Below, one piece after another: positions 1,114 to 23,141 of a stretch of DNA of 23,694 nt; positions within the stretch are counted from its first letter, which is position 1; each line of letters starts with the position of its first letter. The notes under the pieces are model-generated. The model was not told the DNA's origin. It worked only from the letters and a program-made list of their open reading frames with translations, and did no database searches. The DNA lies in the IMG/VR virus record IMGVR_UViG_3300005859_000281, positions 1-23,694 of that record; one strand, given 5' to 3'. The position numbers were made by a program, and so were the translations under genes.

Positions 1114-1149
1114 GCTTTAATTTATGGGAAACACGATTTTAAGCTTAAA

Positions 1150-1218
1150 CAACAGCTGTTTTAGGCGTCTCCAGCTCATCATTTCCAGTCTAACCAGTTG
1201 TGCAGAAAACTTAAATAC
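1150..1218 (+). promoter_or_regulatory. Two-box promoter module copy 1 (CAACAGCTGTTT, CTAACCAGTTG, BRE/TATA TTAAATA)
   Basis: Boxes at 1150-1161 and 1190-1200, TATA 1211-1217, ATG 1243. Confidence 0.75.
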
Positions 1219-1242
1219 CAGCCTTAACAATAGCTAGATACG

Positions 1243-7123: not shown

Positions 7124-7212
7124 AAACAGCTGTTTCAAGACTTTATCCTTCCCTTTATCGCCCTCCATCACGCTACTCATTGCCTAACTGGTTAGGCAGA
7201 AAGCTTAAAATA
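7124..7212 (+). promoter_or_regulatory. Two-box promoter module copy 4
   Basis: AAACAGCTGTTT 7124-7135; inverted repeat TGCCTAAC-TG-GTTAGGCA 7181-7198; TTAAAATA 7205-7212. Confidence 0.75.
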
Positions 7213-11153: not shown

Positions 11154-11310
11154 ACATTACCTTTTTGATGTTTTTGTTTAAAAAGAAAAGGTGTTTATCC
11201 ATCAACAATAAACCTCAAACAGCTGTTTATGAGAGCGGAATAGGATCTGACTTGCTTGAGCTTGCCTTACCAACAGTCAGCTTTATTTGCCGTAGTTCTA
11301 AGGGTATAAT

Positions 11311-16106: not shown

Positions 16107-18467
16107 ATGCAAAGCTTCTTTCATGATAACGAAGATGATGAGAGACAACTGACTGAACTAACAAACACTATTTTTGAAACAGTGGTAAATGAACTTGGAC
16201 ATTTGTCTGATTATCTTTCACTTACACCAGACGTTATGGATAGTTTAAGAGATACTGTATATAAACTTGTCAAGATAGCATCGCAACAAAACAAACTTCT
16301 TTTGCAATTCCCAGCAGTCCTCGCTTATTTCGTTTATAATTTTTTAAAAAATATCGATTTAGATAGGATAAAAGACATAAACGAAAAATTAGACAATATT
16401 CAGCGTCTGATACAACGTAAAAACTTGCAGGGTTTATCATTCAGCACTATCAAACAGCTGTTACAACAAGAATTGCAGGAGAAAAAATTCAGACGCAACA
16501 GACCCAATAAAGCAGAAAAACAAAAAGAAGAGCAGAAACAAAGCGGAAAAGAAGAAAAACAACAAGAACAGCAGAAGCAAGGTGGAAAAAGATCCAACAA
16601 AGTAGAAAAACAACAACAAGAAGGAGAAAAACAAGAAGAGGGAAAAGAAGGGCAGGAAAGTGAAAGCGAAGAGAGCCAAGGACAACAAGGACAGGAATCG
16701 GGAGAAGAAAGCCAGGAGGGTAACGAGCAGGAAAGCGGTGAGGAACAGGGGCAACAAGAAGGTGGAGAAGGAAACCAAGGAGAAGAAACACAACAAGAAG
16801 GACAAGAAGGAGGACAGCAAAGTGAAAGCGAAGGCAACCAAGAGGAGGGAGAAGAAGGGGAGTCACAAGAAGGTGGAGAAGGAGAACAGGGAAACGGAGA
16901 AGAGGGCGAGGAACGGGGAAACGAAAACCAAGGGGAACACGGACAGGAATCAGGAGGAGAAGAAGGGCAACAAAGCAAAAACGAAGGAGAACAGCAAAGT
17001 GGAGAAGAAGGAAACGAAGGAGAACGTGGCAATGCCCAAGAAGGACAGGAATCAGAAGGTGAAAGCGGGAATGAAGAAAGTCAAAGTGGAGAAGAAGGTG
17101 GAGAACAACAACAAGGGCAGGAATCAGAAGTGGAAAGTGAAAACGAAGGAAACGAAGGTCAAAATAGTGAGGGACAAGAAGGTCAAAACGGTGAACAAGG
17201 AGGAGGACAGGGAAACGAAAACGAAGAGAATCAAAGCGGAGAAGAAAGCGGAGAAGGTCAAAATGGCGAACAAGGAGAAGGAAGCGGAATGAACCAGGAG
17301 GGTAACGAGCAGGAAAATGAGGGACAAAGCGGAAATGAAGGGAATGAGGGAGAACAACAAGGAGAAGGGAGTCAAAGTGGAGAAGAAGGTGAGGGACAGG
17401 AATCAGGAGAAGGGCAGGAAAGTGAAAGCGAGGGGAGCCAAAATGGGGAAGGAGAAACCCAAGAAGGTGAAGGAGGAGGACAGCAAAGTGGAGAAGAAGG
17501 CAACCAAGGTCAAAGTGGAGAAGAAGGAGGACAGGAATCAGGAGGAGAAGAAGGGCAACAAAGTGAAAACGAAGATATTATAGAAGACCTCGAAAATAAC
17601 ATAGATGAAGAATCAAAGATTTTAGACGGATTGCAAGAAAGCCTTCAAGAGTCCTTAACAGCTTTATCTATTGGGAAAGGCTCAGGAGGAGGAGTATTAA
17701 AGGATATCAATCCTAGAGTTTTAGAATTATTAGAGAGTGCTAACAGGCTTTTGGCTTTGGCTAACCAAGTTGATTTACAGTACGCTAACAGAGGCGTTAA
17801 AGATCAGGGAGGGGTGATGAGGGGGATAACAACTGGAAATAATGTCAAACATATGTTTAAGAGTCAACTAGTTTTACCGGATGAGATTTTCCTCGAACGG
17901 TATACTAACAGAGCCTTACTGCAAAGGGCGGTAGAAAATGAGGGCGTTGGGGACTTATATTTCATGATAGATAAAAGCGGGTCTATGGGGAATTTTATGC
18001 CGAACGGGTATACTGCGTTTGAAAATGTTTCGGCTGTAGCCTTAGCTTCTGCTATGGAGGCAGAAAAGAACAGTAAGAAGGTGTTTGTACAATACTTCGA
18101 TTCTTCGTCAACCGAGCCTATAGATGTTAACAACGTTTTCGAAGTAGCTCAGACCCAACCCGGAGGAGGAACGGACATGATGGTTGCATTACAAGACTTC
18201 ATGGAATATTATAATAACTATCCCGGGTTAAAGGACGTAAGACAGATCTTCATACTATCTGATTTTGAGACGAACTATGATACTACGCTTTATTATTTCA
18301 AGAACTTTGCAAGAAATAATGGCTTAGTAGTTACGTGCATACATGTATATAATGATGAAGTGCCTGCTCGTATGCAAACCATAATAGACGAAATCTGTGA
18401 TGAATATTATAAATTTAATAATTATGATGCAGGCGAATTATTTTCAGCCGTGTATTCAAAGATTTAG
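16107..18467 (+). CDS. VWA-domain co-chaperone with long E/G/Q-rich linker (ATV p892-like)
   Basis: MIDAS DKSGS...GGGT...ILSD at the C-terminus; directly downstream of the MoxR ATPase. Confidence 0.9.
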   Translation: MQSFFHDNEDDERQLTELTNTIFETVVNELGHLSDYLSLTPDVMDSLRDTVYKLVKIASQQNKLLLQFPAVLAYFVYNFLKNIDLDRIKDINEKLDNIQRLIQRKNLQGLSFSTIKQLLQQELQEKKFRRNRPNKAEKQKEEQKQSGKEEKQQEQQKQGGKRSNKVEKQQQEGEKQEEGKEGQESESEESQGQQGQESGEESQEGNEQESGEEQGQQEGGEGNQGEETQQEGQEGGQQSESEGNQEEGEEGESQEGGEGEQGNGEEGEERGNENQGEHGQESGGEEGQQSKNEGEQQSGEEGNEGERGNAQEGQESEGESGNEESQSGEEGGEQQQGQESEVESENEGNEGQNSEGQEGQNGEQGGGQGNENEENQSGEESGEGQNGEQGEGSGMNQEGNEQENEGQSGNEGNEGEQQGEGSQSGEEGEGQESGEGQESESEGSQNGEGETQEGEGGGQQSGEEGNQGQSGEEGGQESGGEEGQQSENEDIIEDLENNIDEESKILDGLQESLQESLTALSIGKGSGGGVLKDINPRVLELLESANRLLALANQVDLQYANRGVKDQGGVMRGITTGNNVKHMFKSQLVLPDEIFLERYTNRALLQRAVENEGVGDLYFMIDKSGSMGNFMPNGYTAFENVSAVALASAMEAEKNSKKVFVQYFDSSSTEPIDVNNVFEVAQTQPGGGTDMMVALQDFMEYYNNYPGLKDVRQIFILSDFETNYDTTLYYFKNFARNNGLVVTCIHVYNDEVPARMQTIIDEICDEYYKFNNYDAGELFSAVYSKI
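16500..17575 (+). repeat. Intragenic purine-rich imperfect repeats encoding GQESGEE/GEQQ units
   Basis: For example a 35-bp exact repeat at 16941-16975 and 17529-17563. Confidence 0.85.
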
Positions 18468-18861: not shown

Positions 18862-19304
18862 TGCAACCTGAACTTACACCGTCTGATATGATTGCATTAA
18901 TATCCGAAGCTTTAGGGGAAAAAGATGAGGATGGCGACCCGGAGACCTTGATAAAACTATTACTACGCGATGATTTGCCTAAACAAACGAGGTTAATTAT
19001 TCTTAACTGTATCGTGAAAAACTGCGGGTTGCAGAAAAGTTTATCCATATTAGATCCCTTCGTTCCAATAGACGACATACAATCATTAGAGGCATTGAAA
19101 ATCGAAGGGACGAAAATACTTGTATGCATTAATTACACAAAAGTTAGAGATTGTTATTTGATAATTTTAGCGAATAGACAGTTCCATATAAAAAGAGTAA
19201 CTAATCCTAACGAATTATTACAGAAGATGAAGCAACAACAAGGAGGAGGAAAGAGACAAAACAAGGATCTTATTTTAAGTAAGCTCGGCGGTGAGGATCT
19301 CTGA
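18861..19304 (+). CDS. Hypothetical protein (147 aa)
   Basis: ORF with SD GGTGG. Confidence 0.8.
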   Translation: MQPELTPSDMIALISEALGEKDEDGDPETLIKLLLRDDLPKQTRLIILNCIVKNCGLQKSLSILDPFVPIDDIQSLEALKIEGTKILVCINYTKVRDCYLIILANRQFHIKRVTNPNELLQKMKQQQGGGKRQNKDLILSKLGGEDL

Positions 19305-19333
19305 CGGCTTCCCGCACTAAAGGGCGAGTCTTC
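19301..19333 (-). mobile_element. IS200/IS605 right-end remnant associated with a 15-bp direct repeat
   Basis: Reverse complement GAAGACTCGCCCTTTAGTGCGGGAAGCCGTCAG; GGTGAGGATCTCTGA at 19290-19304 and 19343-19357. Confidence 0.6.
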
Positions 19334-19353
19334 ATAAGACGGGGTGAGGATCT

Positions 19354-20865
19354 CTGATATGCGAAGTCGTTGCCAGTTCGTTCAAGCCACGCGACGGTGA
19401 CGTTGTGAACGCTGACATATCAAACATACGTTTTGCATACCCACCAAACTGTATCTTCTCGTCTCAGTACACTCAATTCATTCATGTTGATCATCCTTTG
19501 CCGAAGATAAGCCGACTAAGGTTTAAGAGAGAGAATGGGGAAGAAGTGAAGGATGACAATTACGTAGTAATAGATATTGGAGACGACTTCTTAGTTTTAC
19601 CAATAGAAGTTTGGAATAAACTGAAGGAGCTTATATCGACTTATTTGAGTGAAGGAACTTTGCACGGAGGCATCCTATTGTACGGCGTCCCCGGCACCGG
19701 TAAATCATACATTGCTACTAAATTACTTACAAGGATTCTGGGGTTGAAAGCAATTGTTAAGCAACCTACCGATTTCTTGACGAAATACGTCGGTGAACCT
19801 TATCAATTACTAAACGATTTCATAAATAAACAACTATTTTCCAACAAACCTTCCGTCATAGTTTTTGACGAGGGAGAAAGGTTTTTACTAAAAAGAGGTG
19901 GAGGCGGTGAAGCTGAAAAATTGGTAGAGGACAATATGAAGAATATATTATTAGAAAAATTGCAGGAATTTGCGGATTCGCAATATCCTTCGATTCTTGC
20001 ATTAACTACTAACGCTTCAATAAACGATATGGACGACGCAATGCTGAGGAGGTTTCCCTGGAAAATTTATTTTCCTCCTTATTCGCATACCGTTTACGAG
20101 TACATAGCCAGGAAGATAACTACACAAAGAACTTTCAAAATTGAGGACAAGGAATATGATGTACAGAAACTATCGTTTTATGCATCTGCTACAGGCATTT
20201 CTGTAGCTGAGTTCAGGACTATAATACAGACTGGGACTACCTCTTTTCTCAGGTCAAAAAGTAACTTCCCGAGGAGACTTGTGCCATTCGAATTACAAGA
20301 TAAGGAAAGTATTTTAGATATAACGAAATTGCCCCAACTCAGGCGTTTTGATATCAAAAATAAGAACGTAAAAATGTTATGCGAAGGAGCATTATACACC
20401 ATGACTGCAGTAGTAACAAGCTATTTTCTTACGAGTGAGAATAGACCCGTTTACCTTATAGATTTACAAGAGTCCACTTCCTTGAGGTATGGAAGCGACG
20501 ATATCATAACGTTACTCAAGCAGGAAAACAAACCGGTCGGTATAATTCACATGCATGGCAACCTCAACATCAACAAACAGCTGTTAATAGAGCGTCTACT
20601 GGAAGAGGATAACGTTAGTTTTGTGGTAATAACGAGTTTTGATAGTTCATTATTACAAGTACAAACATTGAAGCTTCTACCTAGGATTGATATAACACAA
20701 TTACCTGCAACTGACACAGACATTTTGAAAAAAATATTGTACACGGTAAACACATTTTACGGGCTGAAGTTGGACATGCAAAAAACGATGAATGAACTAC
20801 ATAGAGAAATGGATTTTAGAAAAGCTATGGATGTGTTGGAGAAAATGATCGCCATGACAATCTAA
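19354..20865 (+). CDS. AAA+ ATPase, CDC48/FtsH-like clade (ATV p529-like)
   Basis: Walker A GVPGTGKS, pore loop KYVGE, Walker B VIVFDE, TTN, DDAMLRRF; start either CTG 19354 (good SD) or GTG 19405. Confidence 0.9.
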   Translation: MICEVVASSFKPRDGDVVNADISNIRFAYPPNCIFSSQYTQFIHVDHPLPKISRLRFKRENGEEVKDDNYVVIDIGDDFLVLPIEVWNKLKELISTYLSEGTLHGGILLYGVPGTGKSYIATKLLTRILGLKAIVKQPTDFLTKYVGEPYQLLNDFINKQLFSNKPSVIVFDEGERFLLKRGGGGEAEKLVEDNMKNILLEKLQEFADSQYPSILALTTNASINDMDDAMLRRFPWKIYFPPYSHTVYEYIARKITTQRTFKIEDKEYDVQKLSFYASATGISVAEFRTIIQTGTTSFLRSKSNFPRRLVPFELQDKESILDITKLPQLRRFDIKNKNVKMLCEGALYTMTAVVTSYFLTSENRPVYLIDLQESTSLRYGSDDIITLLKQENKPVGIIHMHGNLNINKQLLIERLLEEDNVSFVVITSFDSSLLQVQTLKLLPRIDITQLPATDTDILKKILYTVNTFYGLKLDMQKTMNELHREMDFRKAMDVLEKMIAMTI

Positions 20866-20949
20866 AAGGGGGATCGAGGTTGCTCTGAAAAGCAGGAAAT
20901 CCTCACCGCGAGGTGGGGATGCCCCGTCCGTAAGGACGGGATAGTTCAT
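20866..20949 (+). mobile_element. IS200/IS605 remnant with right-end hairpins
   Basis: Hairpins ATCCTCACC-GCGA-GGTGGGGAT and CCCGTCC-GTAA-GGACGGG followed by TAGTTCA. Confidence 0.65.
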
Positions 20950-21896
20950 GCATTACCCAATACCTCAGGGAAAGTAGGTATACCGTCCTTCACGTATTTT
21001 ATCATCATATCCGCTACATCCCACCACATGTATTTAGGTCTTATAGGTACCTCACTAACGTCGCAAGTCATGCCTTCGGCGTCGAGGGGTCTATATAAAT
21101 CCGGGTCTATCTCATAAGTACCACCTACTTTCTCCATTACGTACTTCAAAAAGTCTTCCACACTCGCTATAACACCAGTGCAGAGGATATACCTTTTCGG
21201 CTCCTCTCCTTCCATAACTTTATTGAATATCTTCACATATTCTCCCGCGTATCCCCAATCTTTTTCAGCCTTGATATTACCTAATTTCACATGCTCCTTT
21301 TCCACTAAGTTCTTAACTATTTTCATGGTCACAAACTCTTCGCCCCTCAACTCGCTCTCGTGATTAAACGTTACAAAATCATAAACCTTAAGCCCCCATA
21401 CTTTACGGTAATAAGTAGCGATATACATTAATGAAACTTTACTTATTGCGTAAGGTGTAACGGGAGCCAGCGGTGTAGAAAGGGTTTGAGGGCGTTCCAA
21501 CGGGTGACCGAATACCTCACTCGAAGCAGGTAAAAATACTTTAGTCTCAGGCGTATGTTTCCTAACAGCCTCCAATATAGCATAAGCCGAAAGCTCGTTC
21601 ACCTGAGCCGTATAGATGGGGTTATTATAGCTATACGGAACGAAGCTCATAGCACCATAATGATATATCATGTCGGGCTTTAGCTCACGTACTATGTCGA
21701 AGACGTTTTCATATTCTGTAAGGTCAGCATAGACAAATTTAGGAGATACACCAAGAATTTCAATGACAGTCCGCATCTGGTTAGTCAACCCGTCTGCTCT
21801 ATGCCTGGTTAATACATATAACTCATCTCCCTTCTTTATATGAAGGAAGGTAGAAAGACTTGAGTCCTGACCCGCACCTGTAATTAAAACCTTCAT
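20946..21896 (-). CDS. gmd: GDP-mannose 4,6-dehydratase
   Basis: ITGAGQD, ASSEVFG, YAISK (YxxxK), FNHES.LRGEEFVT.KI, LGN...KDWG, YRP. Confidence 0.9.
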   Translation of the reverse strand: MKVLITGAGQDSSLSTFLHIKKGDELYVLTRHRADGLTNQMRTVIEILGVSPKFVYADLTEYENVFDIVRELKPDMIYHYGAMSFVPYSYNNPIYTAQVNELSAYAILEAVRKHTPETKVFLPASSEVFGHPLERPQTLSTPLAPVTPYAISKVSLMYIATYYRKVWGLKVYDFVTFNHESELRGEEFVTMKIVKNLVEKEHVKLGNIKAEKDWGYAGEYVKIFNKVMEGEEPKRYILCTGVIASVEDFLKYVMEKVGGTYEIDPDLYRPLDAEGMTCDVSEVPIRPKYMWWDVADMMIKYVKDGIPTFPEVLGNA

Positions 21897-21973: not shown

Positions 21974-22033
21974 ATTTAGGGGTTCCAAGGGGGCGTAAGA
22001 TTCCGACTGACCAATTCTAGGGGAGGAAGCCAG
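21974..22033 (+). mobile_element. Mini IS200/IS605-derived element (fused left and right ends, ~60 bp)
   Basis: TATAA then ATTTAGGGGTTCCAAGGGGGCGTAAG...GGGGAGGAAGCCAG. Confidence 0.6.
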
Positions 22034-22042
22034 CTAAATAAC

Positions 22043-22063
22043 TTTTTAAACAGCTGTTTGAGA
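22043..22063 (+). promoter_or_regulatory. TATA box overlapped by the AAACAGCTGTTTGAGA palindrome
   Basis: TTTTTAAA 22043-22050, palindrome 22048-22059, ATG 22074. Confidence 0.7.
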
Positions 22064-22073
22064 GGTATATATA

Positions 22074-22538
22074 ATGAGTGAAAATAATCGTAATAAGCGT
22101 CTTTCTTCATTCGAGACGTATGCAGAAGCTATAGCGAAAATACTAAACTTAATATATACACTTGACCAACTTTCGCAATATTATGACCTTAACCAACTCT
22201 CTACACAGTACCTTAACCAGCCATTTACTCCTATTTCACCTAAAAAACTTGTAAATTATTTTGGTGTTCAGTACAACAAAATACCAAGCCTAGTTCAGCA
22301 AACACAATACAATCCTGTGGCATTGGTAACGAAGGCAAATCAAATTGCCCAGCAAATTGAACCAGATGTAATAAATTCCCTTGCGTCAATGTACGGCGTC
22401 GAACCAAGTATAGTTAGATCGTTACAAGTATATTTGCAGTTGGCACAGGTTTTACCAAAGGTAGTGAGTAGCCAGACCGTTCAAGTCACCAATAATCAAC
22501 AATATACTGCGTCGCCCTACGTGATGGAAAACTACTGA
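22074..22538 (+). CDS. Hypothetical Q-rich protein (154 aa)
   Basis: ORF with a clear promoter. Confidence 0.8.
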   Translation: MSENNRNKRLSSFETYAEAIAKILNLIYTLDQLSQYYDLNQLSTQYLNQPFTPISPKKLVNYFGVQYNKIPSLVQQTQYNPVALVTKANQIAQQIEPDVINSLASMYGVEPSIVRSLQVYLQLAQVLPKVVSSQTVQVTNNQQYTASPYVMENY

Positions 22539-22583
22539 ACTAACCTACCTCGAGGCTTTCTGCCCCCTTAACCCCCCAGAAAG
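22535..22583 (-). mobile_element. Mini IS200/IS605-derived element (49 bp)
   Basis: CTGAACTA...GAGGCTTTCTGCCCCCTTAACCCCCCAGAAAG followed by TTAAA; homologous to 23059-23113. Confidence 0.7.
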
Positions 22584-22615
22584 TTAAAAATCGTTATAAT
22601 ATCAAGAATCTATTG

Positions 22616-23062
22616 ATGTCGAGATTCTTGGTGTCAAGATTGCTGAAATTTGCCGTGGTCGGGGGGCTAGGCACGTTCGTGAATGAACTAGTATTTTTAT
22701 CTACTACTAAGCTTTTATCCATATCGATATCATTAGCATTAGCAATAGAGCTTTCAATAATATTTAATTTTATACTAAATGATATTTGGACTTTTAAGGA
22801 TAAAAGAGTAGGAAGTTTTATTAAGAGACTACTTAAATTTCATATGTCGTCAGCTAGTGGAGGAATTATTCAGTATATTGTGGTAATTTCCATTATTGTA
22901 ATCATGTTTCATTTTAGTAATGCTTCGGAAATAGTGGCAATATTGTTTTTTACGTCTTATTTAAAACTTCAGTCTTTAGTACTTGGCATAATCAATTTCA
23001 TAGGAATAATTTCTGGGTTCATCGTAAGATTTATAACAAGTATAAAGTTGGTATGGACGTGA
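22616..23062 (+). CDS. gtrA: GtrA-family protein (putative lipid-linked sugar flippase)
   Basis: KFAVVGGLGTFVN...SIIFNFILNDIWTFKD; four TM helices. Confidence 0.88.
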   Translation: MSRFLVSRLLKFAVVGGLGTFVNELVFLSTTKLLSISISLALAIELSIIFNFILNDIWTFKDKRVGSFIKRLLKFHMSSASGGIIQYIVVISIIVIMFHFSNASEIVAILFFTSYLKLQSLVLGIINFIGIISGFIVRFITSIKLVWT

Positions 23063-23113
23063 ACTACCACGCCCTCACGGAGGGGGACTTTCGCCCCCTC
23101 AACCCCCAGAAAT
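23059..23113 (-). mobile_element. Mini IS200/IS605-derived element (55 bp)
   Basis: GTGAACTACCACGCCCTCACGGAGGGGGACTTTCGCCCCCTCAACCCCCAGAAAT followed by TTAAA. Confidence 0.75.
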
Positions 23114-23141
23114 TTAAACATGTAAAACATATGTTTTTATG

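What the first reader, a model, noticed from the sequence alone, without database searches (positions are those of the whole stretch)
22535..23118. Insertions that rebuild the host gene's stop codon and sit against the next TATA box
Seen: the TGA stops of four genes are the first bases of an element end: 22536 (C-TGA-ACTA), 23060 (G-TGA-ACTA), gmd at 20948 (A-TGA-ACTA on the minus strand) and 19302 (C-TGA-CGG). Removing 22535-22583 gives AAC TAT TAA A and removing 23059-23113 gives TGG ACT TAA A, so the last residue and stop are unchanged. The retained TTAAA (22584 and 23114) lies ~30 nt before the next start codon, and the element adds a BRE-like CAGAAA just upstream. Known: TTTAA is the target motif reported for Sulfolobus IS605/TnpB elements. 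Inference: the TTTAA target plus a TCAC/TCAG right end makes insertion at T-TAA-A stops silent, and the junction may create a promoter for the captured gene.
Basis: partly seen in the sequence, partly recalled or inferred. Interest (0 to 1): 0.75.

Follow-up and report, generated by a model that had tools for sequence, protein, structure and literature searches.

The report
Tiny transposon remnants that preserve stop codons
Two 49- and 55-base relics of a known archaeal transposon family sit on either side of a sugar-transfer gene in a Sulfolobus virus. They inserted where a stop codon overlaps the next gene's TATA box, and the transposon's end replaces the displaced TAA with an in-frame TGA, so the insertion is almost silent.

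Summary
The window is an SMV1-like Sulfolobus monocaudavirus. Elements A (22535-22583) and B (23059-23113) are miniature "terminal-only" derivatives of the Sulfolobus IS605-type (TnpB) insertion sequence. Published work gives this IS the target TTTAA and the right-end terminus TTCAC. The active strand is the window's minus strand.

SMV4 has one mini there. SMV1a differs from SMV1 by a clean 55-nt insertion with no target duplication.

The stop is kept because the reverse complement of the right end (N-TGA-A) mimics that of the target (T-TAA-A). Across 136 right ends from many archaea, an intact gene stops exactly on the element's TGA in 20 cases, against 4 and 4 in the other two frames. That is about 3.5-4 times what non-disruptive TTTAA sites predict.

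The retained TTAAA lies at the usual TATA distance, but the TATA box predates the insertion, so the element preserves a promoter rather than creating one. The fourth case (19302) is a different event, a 54-nt insertion with a 15-nt duplication. Gene capture is not shown.

The element kind is already known (SMN1/SMN2, haloarchaeal 52-bp PATEs). I found no earlier description of the stop-codon rule.

The parts
22535..22583 (-). Mini element A, 49 nt: a decayed terminal-only derivative of the IS605-type IS. Its right end (rc C-TGA-ACTA) supplies the stop of ORF 22074-22538. The 3' arm of its hairpin is lost.
   Evidence: Alignment A1. Orthologous single mini in SMV4. Empty site in SMV2. 15-nt exact match to the IS left end.
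22584..22588 (+). Retained TTAAA: the reverse complement of the TTTAA target of A, at the TATA position (-32) for gtrA.
   Evidence: TTAA flanks all 14 minis.
22616..23062 (+). gtrA (GtrA/DPMS transmembrane domain). Its TGA stop at 23060-23062 comes from the right end of B.
   Evidence: Pfam PF04138, profile positions 1-117 of 117 on residues 11-147 of 148.
23059..23113 (-). Mini element B, 55 nt: 27-nt left-end tail, one hybrid hairpin, 8-nt right-end tail ending TTCAC.
   Evidence: Equals positions 1-28 plus 285-320 of the ~334-nt ATSV copy at 93-94% identity. A1. Same element in L212 and L214.
23114..23118 (+). Retained TTAAA: target of B, at the TATA position (-28 / -25) for the gene starting 23139/23142.
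   Evidence: SMV2 has TTAAAC 28 nt before the orthologous ATG with no element.
22074..22538 (+). 154-aa ORF whose stop was converted from TAA to TGA. Its last codon is TAC here and TAT in SMV2.
20866..20949 (+). Right-end-only fragment (the 3' part of the guide-RNA scaffold region). Its TTCA-T end supplies the TGA stop of gmd on the opposite strand.
   Evidence: 94% identity to ATSV over 83 nt. Matches positions 1359-1417 of the full IS in L016.
20946..21896 (-). gmd (GDP-mannose 4,6-dehydratase), absent from SMV1-4.
   Evidence: Pfam PF16363.. No close viral relative.
21974..22003 (+). Left-end-only fragment of the same family, preceded by TATAA.
   Evidence: Inverted repeat I19 with B. Sequence read.
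19305..19358 (.). NOT part of the family: a 54-nt insertion made of a 39-nt insert plus a second copy of the 15-nt GGTGAGGATCTCTGA. It separates two genes that overlap in all relatives.

Best explanation
A and B are non-autonomous, terminal-only miniatures (49 and 55 nt) of the Sulfolobus IS605-type insertion sequence that carries TnpB. Each is a left-end tail, one hairpin fused from the left- and right-end hairpins, and a right-end tail.

They are most likely moved in trans by a Y1 TnpA transposase through single-strand 'peel and paste'. That mechanism inserts 3' of 5'-NTTAA (here TTTAA) on the window's minus strand and makes no target duplication.

In this compact virus the target is a site where T-TAA-A is both the stop of the upstream gene and the core of the downstream gene's TATA box. 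The right-end cleavage site (TTCAC or TTCAG) is a near copy of the target (TTTAA). On the gene's strand, the incoming N-TGA-A therefore takes the place of the displaced T-TAA-A in the same frame. Only the third base of the last sense codon changes, and TTAAA stays at its normal distance from the next start.

Such insertions are nearly neutral, so they survive. That is why right ends of this family coincide with stop codons more often than chance.

Shown: the family identity, the target, the absence of duplication, the empty site, the frame enrichment and the intact neighbouring genes. Inferred: TnpA dependence, neutrality for transcription, and where and when B met the gtrA stop.
For: Family and polarity.
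- A full 1.4-kb copy (L016) has a 412-aa ORF with the OrfB_IS605, Cas12f1-like TNB and HTH_OrfB domains. It starts next to the TTAA-flanked end and finishes at ...GGGGTAGTTCAC.
- PMC11043419 reports TTTAA as the insertion site/TAM and TTCAC as the conserved right-end terminus of S. islandicus IS605 elements.
- B equals the two termini of the ATSV SMN-like copy.
- All 14 minis are flanked by TTAA on the left-end side.

Natural experiments.
- SMV1a, a laboratory derivative of SMV1 (PMC12199143), has a 55-nt insertion at CATCA^TTAAT with unique boundaries and no duplication.
- SMV2 is empty, SMV4 has one mini, and the window has A + gtrA + B at the same junction.
- The left half of the SMV1a mini is 98% identical to the left end of an element in S. 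islandicus plasmids pARN4 and pHVE14.

Statistics.
- Of 136 unique right ends, 20 (about 15 independent events) have an ORF of at least 100 codons ending exactly on the element's TGA. The other two frames give 4 and 4 (p = 0.0017 after de-duplication).
- All 10 such ORFs tested carry a Pfam domain. In most it runs to or close to the protein's C-terminus; MutS_V and ABC2 are the weaker cases.
- Stop-overlapping sites are 3.0% of the non-disruptive TTTAA sites in the same loci. About 11% of right ends sit on such a site (p about 1e-4).

Selection at the junction. The base before TGA is G in 11 of 14 minis. It is C only in A and in SMV4, where G would make TAG and remove the conserved terminal Tyr.

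TATA position.
Against: - No empty site was found for B. Other gtrA alleles end GCT TAA C and have different downstream sequence.
- One hairpin is fewer than the two that the IS608 model uses, and the predicted ssDNA folds are not better than shuffles.
- Only 1-2 of 9 independent mini insertions in metagenomes abut a long ORF, so the stop coincidence is a minority outcome.
- The genome census used crude ORF calls, and the loci were chosen because they contain the element.
- No transcription data were used.
Confidence: 0.8

Rival explanations
1. Evolved stealth and cargo capture. The ends were shaped by selection to rebuild both a stop and a BRE/TATA promoter. Two minis in the same orientation (LE of B ... 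RE of A) act as a composite transposon that moves gtrA, and similarly gmd, between viruses.
For: - Both strain-specific glycosylation genes are bracketed the same way, with a left end upstream and a right end on the stop.
- The A + gtrA + B block sits exactly where SMV2 is empty and SMV4 has one mini.
- The left-end tail AGAAAT/AGAAAG next to TTAAA resembles native promoters of the window such as CAGAAAAC-TTAAATA.
- The reverse complement of the target is N-TAA-N even in lineages with other targets (ATAAA, GTAAG).
Against: - gtrA is always found between the same two genes, and in SMV1, L214, L215-L217 it has different flanks.
- A has lost its hairpin arm, so the block is not mobile now.
- gmd is flanked only by half-elements, and no second copy of it was found.
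- The left-end tail varies across the minis (CATAAAG, CAAAACG, CGTAATG, TAATTAAG).
- The TATA box predates the insertion.
- In a co-directional, compact genome, any gene between two occupied stop/TATA junctions will look bracketed.
Confidence: 0.2
2. B, and possibly A, did not transpose into this site. They came in with gtrA by homologous recombination between mini copies that serve as portable homology. The gtrA stop met the right end elsewhere or earlier.
For: - SMV4 has a single mini whose 5' flank and first base (C) match A, and whose 3' tail and flank match B.
- The junction carries many different remnants in different relatives: an internally deleted mini in L212, only CTGACCC in L215/L216, and left-end fragments in the opposite orientation in SMV1 and L217.
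- SMV1a lost its IS by recombination between two hairpin copies.
Against: This does not remove the need for an original transposition that joined a right end to the gtrA stop in frame. L212 and L214 show the same gtrA-B junction with GTG or ACG as the last codon, as expected from xxT to xxG.
Confidence: 0.3
3. The GC-rich modules are host-selected functional RNA or DNA signals (terminator, insulator, small RNA) rather than transposon relics.
For: They lie in intergenic positions, are GC-rich in an AT-rich genome, and can form short hairpins.
Against: There is no Rfam match, no T-run, and no fold better than shuffles. The sequence is homologous end to end with the IS termini. They are present or absent among close relatives without any change to the genes.
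Confidence: 0.05

Closest known systems
S. islandicus IS605-type TnpB elements (SisTnpB1 / TnpB7)
   Same: Target/TAM TTTAA (NTTAA tolerated), right end ending TTCAC, tnpB reading toward the right end (PMC11043419; bioRxiv 10.1101/2023.03.06.531077). A, B and the 20866-20949 fragment carry these termini.
   Different: A and B have no tnpB and no guide-RNA scaffold, and they are 49-55 nt long. The papers I read do not discuss stop codons or TATA boxes.
SMN1 / SMN2 (Sulfolobus miniature non-inverted-repeat transposable elements)
   Same: Non-autonomous IS200/IS605 derivatives in Sulfolobus hosts, plasmids and SMV1. SMN2 is annotated twice in SMV1 (PMC3839810, PMC3718332).
   Different: SMN1 and SMN2 are 320 and 251 bp and keep internal sequence. 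A and B keep only the termini.
Terminal-only PATEs of Haloquadratum (52-bp derivative of ISHwa23)
   Same: A 1.5-kb IS605-type transposon reduced to about 52 bp by deletion between its two near-terminal palindromes. There is no target duplication, and strain-specific insertions suggest the tiny form is mobile (PMC3119063).
   Different: A haloarchaeal host, a different sequence and target, and no link to stop codons or promoters reported in the passages I read.
IS608 of Helicobacter pylori (reference mechanism for IS200/IS605)
   Same: Strand-specific insertion 3' of a short target, no duplication, and subterminal hairpins about 19 nt from the left end and about 10 nt from the right end. Here the distances are 27 nt and 8 nt. 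From memory, its target TTAC and right-end site TCAA give G-TAA and T-TGA on the other strand, so the same in-frame rule would apply.
   Different: IS608 has two hairpins and is autonomous with tnpA. The IS608 figures are recalled, not tested here.
Bacterial small mobile repeats that overlap the 3' ends of genes (for example IS605 stem-loops next to Borrelia lipoprotein genes)
   Same: Transposon-end sequence overlaps the last codons and stop of a neighbouring gene (PMC2775950).
   Different: There it is the left stem-loop region with a TAA stop, and the account is descriptive. No frame rule or enrichment is given.

Membership tests
IS200/IS605 family, non-autonomous derivative (PATE / SMN type) | No target-site duplication on insertion | tested here: met
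   SMV1 versus SMV1a: a 55-nt insertion with unique boundaries at CATCA^TTAAT and no repeated flank.
IS200/IS605 family, non-autonomous derivative (PATE / SMN type) | Insertion 3' of a fixed tetra- or pentanucleotide that abuts the left end only | tested here: met
   TTAA(A) flanks the left-end side of 14 of 14 minis. The right-end flank is variable. In genome loci the flank is TTAAA in 13 of 20, with variants that also read N-TAA-N.
IS200/IS605 family, non-autonomous derivative (PATE / SMN type) | No terminal inverted repeats; subterminal hairpins at asymmetric distances from the ends | tested here: inconclusive
   The ends are not inverted repeats. The full copy has hairpins 27 nt from the left end and 8 nt from the right end. 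The minis have one hybrid hairpin, and predicted folds are not better than shuffles.
IS200/IS605 family, non-autonomous derivative (PATE / SMN type) | Termini homologous to those of an autonomous or TnpB-bearing element | tested here: met
   B matches the termini of L016 and of the ATSV copy at 93-94%. The L016 ORF has the TnpB Pfam domains.
IS200/IS605 family, non-autonomous derivative (PATE / SMN type) | Mobilisation by a Y1 (HUH) TnpA through a single-stranded intermediate | not testable with these tools
   The window has no tnpA. SMV1 carries an IS200/605 with OrfA. Dependence on TnpA is inferred.
S. islandicus IS605-type subgroup | Right end terminating in TTCAC | tested here: met
   TTCA is invariant. 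The last base is C in 11 of 14 minis, G in A and SMV4, and T in one, compared with PMC11043419.
TnpB guide-RNA (omega/reRNA) locus | Guide-RNA scaffold upstream of the right end | tested here: not met
   A and B keep only 8-20 nt of the right end. Only 20866-20949 keeps 83 nt of the scaffold region, and no tnpB is present in the window.
Composite transposon carrying gtrA | The same block bounded by the same two ends found at a second, non-orthologous target site | tested here: not met
   All 7 gtrA loci in the viral collection lie between the same two genes. Their flanks differ.

The most novel reading that the evidence does not exclude
The similarity between the target (N-TTA-N) and the right-end cleavage site (TTCAC) may be a selected 'stealth' design of this widespread IS605 lineage, not just a mechanical by-product. 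It would allow silent colonisation of stop-codon/TATA junctions in compact archaeal and viral genomes. Tandem minis would then work as portable ends that shuttle accessory genes such as gtrA and gmd between viruses.
Probability: 0.15. Interest if true: 0.75.

Novelty: new member of a known kind. Interest (0 to 1): 0.5.

Why it matters
It explains how a very abundant transposon family (IS605/TnpB) can persist in gene-dense archaeal and viral genomes. One class of its target sites is a stop codon, and the transposon's own end restores that stop in frame.

This gives annotators a simple rule: a TGA followed by ACTACC... may come from a transposon. It also means that in roughly a tenth of copies the guide segment of the transposon RNA is antisense to the 3' end of a neighbouring gene.

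It points to a ready-made natural test pair, SMV1 and SMV1a, for asking whether a 55-nt mini placed in a TATA box changes expression. And it marks the variable glycosylation genes of these viruses as lying between transposon relics.

Tried and rejected
- C/D-box small RNA: I considered this on first reading of 22520-22540. The spacing is wrong, and Rfam gives no match anywhere in the window.
- ssDNA folding of the minis on both strands: short hairpins only, z-scores from -0.3 to -2.7, not informative.
- Empty site for B: a search among 7 gtrA loci found none.
- Relatives of the gmd cassette: only the window itself and one 32%-identity hit.
- B-type minis in the viral collection: only the window and one relative. 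The metagenome scan gave 9 independent sites.
- Orientation bias of right ends relative to downstream gene starts: too noisy to use.
- A second mini family (SMV3 L003:3859-3912, derived from the ends of the SMV1 IS200/605). I could not settle its polarity. The terminal TGAY may belong to the element or may be a TTGAY-type target. Hairpin geometry and gene orientation argue one way, and the SMV2/SMV4 junction comparison argues the other.
- 19302 as a member of either family: rejected.
- Berkner & Lipps 2007 (SMN1) could not be read.

Full report
WHAT THE WINDOW IS. Window 19000-23694 matches Sulfolobus monocaudaviruses SMV1, SMV1a, SMV4, SMV3 and SMV2 at 76-88% identity over the conserved genes. 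The window is itself an IMG/VR contig of 23,694 bp. The relatives give orthologous junctions to compare.

OBSERVATION.
- The four TGAs are stops of real ORFs.
- The ORF ending at 23062 is a full-length GtrA. Its Pfam profile is covered 1-117 of 117, up to residue 147 of 148.
- The ORF ending at 20946 on the minus strand is a GDP-mannose 4,6-dehydratase.
- The sequences after the stops at 22536, 23060 and 20948(-) all begin TGAACTA.
- A (22535-22583) and B (23059-23113) both end in CCCCCAGAAA(G/T), followed by TTAAA.

WHAT THE ELEMENTS ARE.
- Scanning the viral collection with the shared core found longer repeats with the same two ends. These are copies of about 330 nt, and 1.4-kb copies that encode a protein.
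- In L016 the 1,418-nt element carries a 412-aa ORF with the OrfB_IS605, Cas12f1-like TNB and HTH_OrfB_IS605 domains, that is, a TnpB.
- tnpB starts next to the TTAA-flanked end and stops just inside ...GGGGTAGTTCAC. The active (tnpB-sense) strand of A and B is therefore the window's minus strand: TTTAA | left end ... right end TTCAC.
- This matches what is published for S. islandicus IS605 elements. The insertion site/TAM is TTTAA, the right end terminates in a conserved TTCAC, and NTTAA is tolerated (PMC11043419 and the bioRxiv SisTnpB1 paper).
- B equals positions 1-28 plus 285-320 of the ~334-nt ATSV copy at 93-94% identity.
- Window 20866-20948 equals positions 2-84 of that copy at 94%. 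It is a right-end-only fragment on the plus strand.
- A left-end-only fragment lies at about 21974-22003.
- The minis therefore consist of a 27-nt left tail, one hairpin built from the 5' arm of the left hairpin and the 3' arm of the right hairpin, and an 8-nt right tail.
- Fourteen such minis of 49-61 nt, from this virus group and from nine independent metagenome sites, align with an invariant TGAACTA, and each has TTAA beyond the left end.
- A has lost the G-rich hairpin arm and looks decayed.

WHAT IS ALREADY KNOWN.
- SMV1's annotation lists two SMN2 elements ('Sulfolobus miniature noninverted repeat transposable element') and an IS200/605.
- SMN1 (320 bp) is reported as mobilised by the ISC1733 transposase (PMC3718332; PMC3839810).
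- A 1.5-kb IS605-type transposon collapsing to a 52-bp terminal-only element through recombination between its palindromes, and apparently still moving, was described in Haloquadratum (PMC3119063).
- The kind of element is therefore known. These copies are new members.

NATURAL EXPERIMENTS.
(1) SMV1a is the laboratory descendant of SMV1 (PMC12199143). Upstream of the SWIM-finger gene, SMV1 reads CATCA-TTAATTTTT. SMV1a has 55 extra bases (L005:3361-3415) exactly between A and T. They begin GTGAACTACC, and there is no duplication. The passages of that paper returned by my term search do not mention this insertion. Its left half is 98% identical to the left end of an element in S. islandicus plasmids pARN4 and pHVE14.
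(2) At the junction after the 154-aa ORF, SMV2 reads GAA AAC TAT TAA ACC, with the next ATG 28 nt after TTAAAC. SMV4 has a single 52-nt mini there and no gtrA. The window has A, gtrA and B. L212 has an internally deleted A. L215 and L216 keep only C-TGA-CCC.

WHY THE STOP SURVIVES.
- On the gene's strand the target reads T-TAA-A and the incoming right end reads N-TGA-A. The insertion point lies before the T.
- So TGA lands where TAA was, and only the third base of the last sense codon changes: TAT to TAC for A, and ACT to ACG inferred for B.
- The reason is that the two cleavage sites, TTTAA and TTCAC, are near copies. The T/C difference at position 3 becomes A/G inside the stop codon.
- Where other targets occur they still read N-TAA-N (ATAAA, ATAAT, GTAAG).
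- One detail points to selection. The base before TGA is G in 11 of 14 minis. It is C only in A and SMV4, where G would make TAG and delete the terminal Tyr. That Tyr is conserved in all nine relatives.

IS IT MORE THAN CHANCE?
- The right-end motif occurs in more than 120 genome loci from many archaeal phyla and a few bacteria.
- Among 136 unique right ends, an ORF of at least 100 codons ends exactly on the element's TGA in 20 cases (about 15 independent events). ORFs abutting the end in the other two frames number 4 and 4 (binomial p = 0.0017 after de-duplication).
- Ten of these ORFs were scanned and all carry a Pfam domain. In most it runs to or close to the protein's C-terminus. They are ribosomal protein S2, DUF2666, ABC-2, MOSC, MutS_V, subtilase, AHSA1, PhoU_div, peptidase M54 and HxlR; MutS_V and ABC-2 are the weaker cases.
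- A census of TTTAA sites in the same loci gives 33 stop-rebuilding sites, 41 sites just after a stop, 1042 non-coding and 1649 coding.
- About 11% of right ends sit on a stop. That compares with 3.0% of non-disruptive sites (3.4-4.0-fold, p about 1e-4) and 1.2% of all sites.
- In the virus loci the figures are 3 of about 16 against 5.4% (p = 0.05).
- The excess is what purifying selection would produce if these insertions are silent. It does not require targeting of stops.
- Most copies do not sit on stops. Only 1-2 of the 9 metagenome minis do.

TATA BOX.
- Eight native genes of the window have a TATA-like motif at -26 to -32 from the start. A's TTAAA is at -32, and B's is at -28 or -25.
- In AT-rich loci, about 6 of 17 independent left ends lie 25-37 nt upstream of a co-oriented ORF start. 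pHVE14 gives another case, at 30 nt.
- The target is simply the core of a Sulfolobus TATA box. In this orientation that core stays attached to its gene.
- Since SMV2 has the same TATA at the same distance without any element, the insertion preserves a promoter rather than making one.
- The AGAAA(T/G) tail resembles native upstream sequence such as CAGAAAAC-TTAAATA and the RNWAAW BRE consensus as I recall it. But the tail varies among minis, and no transcription data were examined.

CARGO GENES.
- gtrA and gmd are both absent from SMV2-4. Each has a left end upstream and a right end on its stop.
- A composite transposon (left end of B to right end of A) is formally possible.
- Against it: gtrA is always between the same two genes and has other flanks in SMV1, L214 and L215-L217. 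A is decayed. gmd has only half-elements and no second copy.
- Recombination between minis is an equally good account.

THE FOURTH CASE AND A SECOND FAMILY.
- At 19302 the window has a 39-nt insert followed by a second copy of the 15-nt GGTGAGGATCTCTGA. All relatives have the two genes overlapping at TTATGA/ATATGA.
- There the stop is rebuilt by duplication of host sequence, not by an IS605 right end, and the ATPase loses its ATG.
- SMV3 carries at the 154-aa ORF stop a different mini derived from the ends of the SMV1 IS200/605. In SMV1 another copy supplies the TGA of an RHH gene.
- I could not settle whether its terminal TGAY is element or target.

LIMITS. ORF calls in the census are mechanical. 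The genome loci were selected through the element. TnpA dependence and transcriptional neutrality are inferred. The IS608 comparison (TTAC / TCAA) is from memory.

Noticed in passing
window 19305-19358: A 54-nt insertion with a 15-nt direct duplication splits two genes that overlap (TTATGA/ATATGA) in SMV1-4. It also changes the ATPase start ATG to CTG, so the first listed start becomes GTG at 19405.
   Followed up: partly
window 1147-1158, 1482-1493, 1950-1961, 7124-7135, 11219-11230, 22048-22059; also SMV1 L210:47713-47724: The palindrome AAACAGCTGTTT (or close variants) recurs just upstream or downstream of promoter TATA boxes of several genes. It is conserved at the same places in SMV1-4, so it is a likely operator for a viral regulator. 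In SMV1 and L037 an SMN right end abuts it directly.
   Followed up: no
window 1158-1219 and 1492-1553: Two 62-nt direct repeats (82% identical), each ending in a BRE/TATA-like (C/T)AGAA(A/G)A(C/T)TTAAATA about 30 nt before a start codon. They look like duplicated promoter modules rather than IS relics.
   Followed up: partly
L005:3361-3415 (SMV1a) versus L001:3360-3375 (SMV1): The laboratory strain SMV1a has gained a 55-nt mini in the TATA region of gp17. The passages of the SMV1a paper returned by my term search do not mention it. SMV1a lost its IS200/605 by recombination between two hairpin copies, not by precise excision.
   Followed up: yes
genome loci L090-L209: The 21-nt right-end motif TGAACTACCCCGCCCTNACGG is conserved almost unchanged in Thermococci, methanogens, Marsarchaeota, Nitrososphaeria, Micrarchaeota, Jordarchaeia and some bacterial MAGs. 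This is an unusually wide spread for one IS terminus.
   Followed up: partly
L003:3859-3912 (SMV3); L210:48368-48416 (SMV1): A second family of ~50-nt minis comes from the ends of the SMV1 IS200/605 (ISC1467-type). Both of its ends read TGA on one strand, and copies supply the stops of the 154-aa ORF (SMV3) and of an RHH gene (SMV1). Its polarity and target are unresolved.
   Followed up: partly
window 16500-17600: The 786-aa ORF (16107-18467), orthologous by position to SMV1's von Willebrand A protein, contains a long, highly degenerate Glu/Gly/Gln/Ser-rich repeat region.
   Followed up: no
L243:601-650 (pARN4) and L244:601-680 (pHVE14): The same left end occurs in two S. islandicus plasmids at different sites. 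In pARN4 the target's TAA is the stop of a co-oriented gene (insertion just after the stop). In pHVE14 the retained TTAAAA lies 30 nt before an AAA ATPase start.
   Followed up: partly
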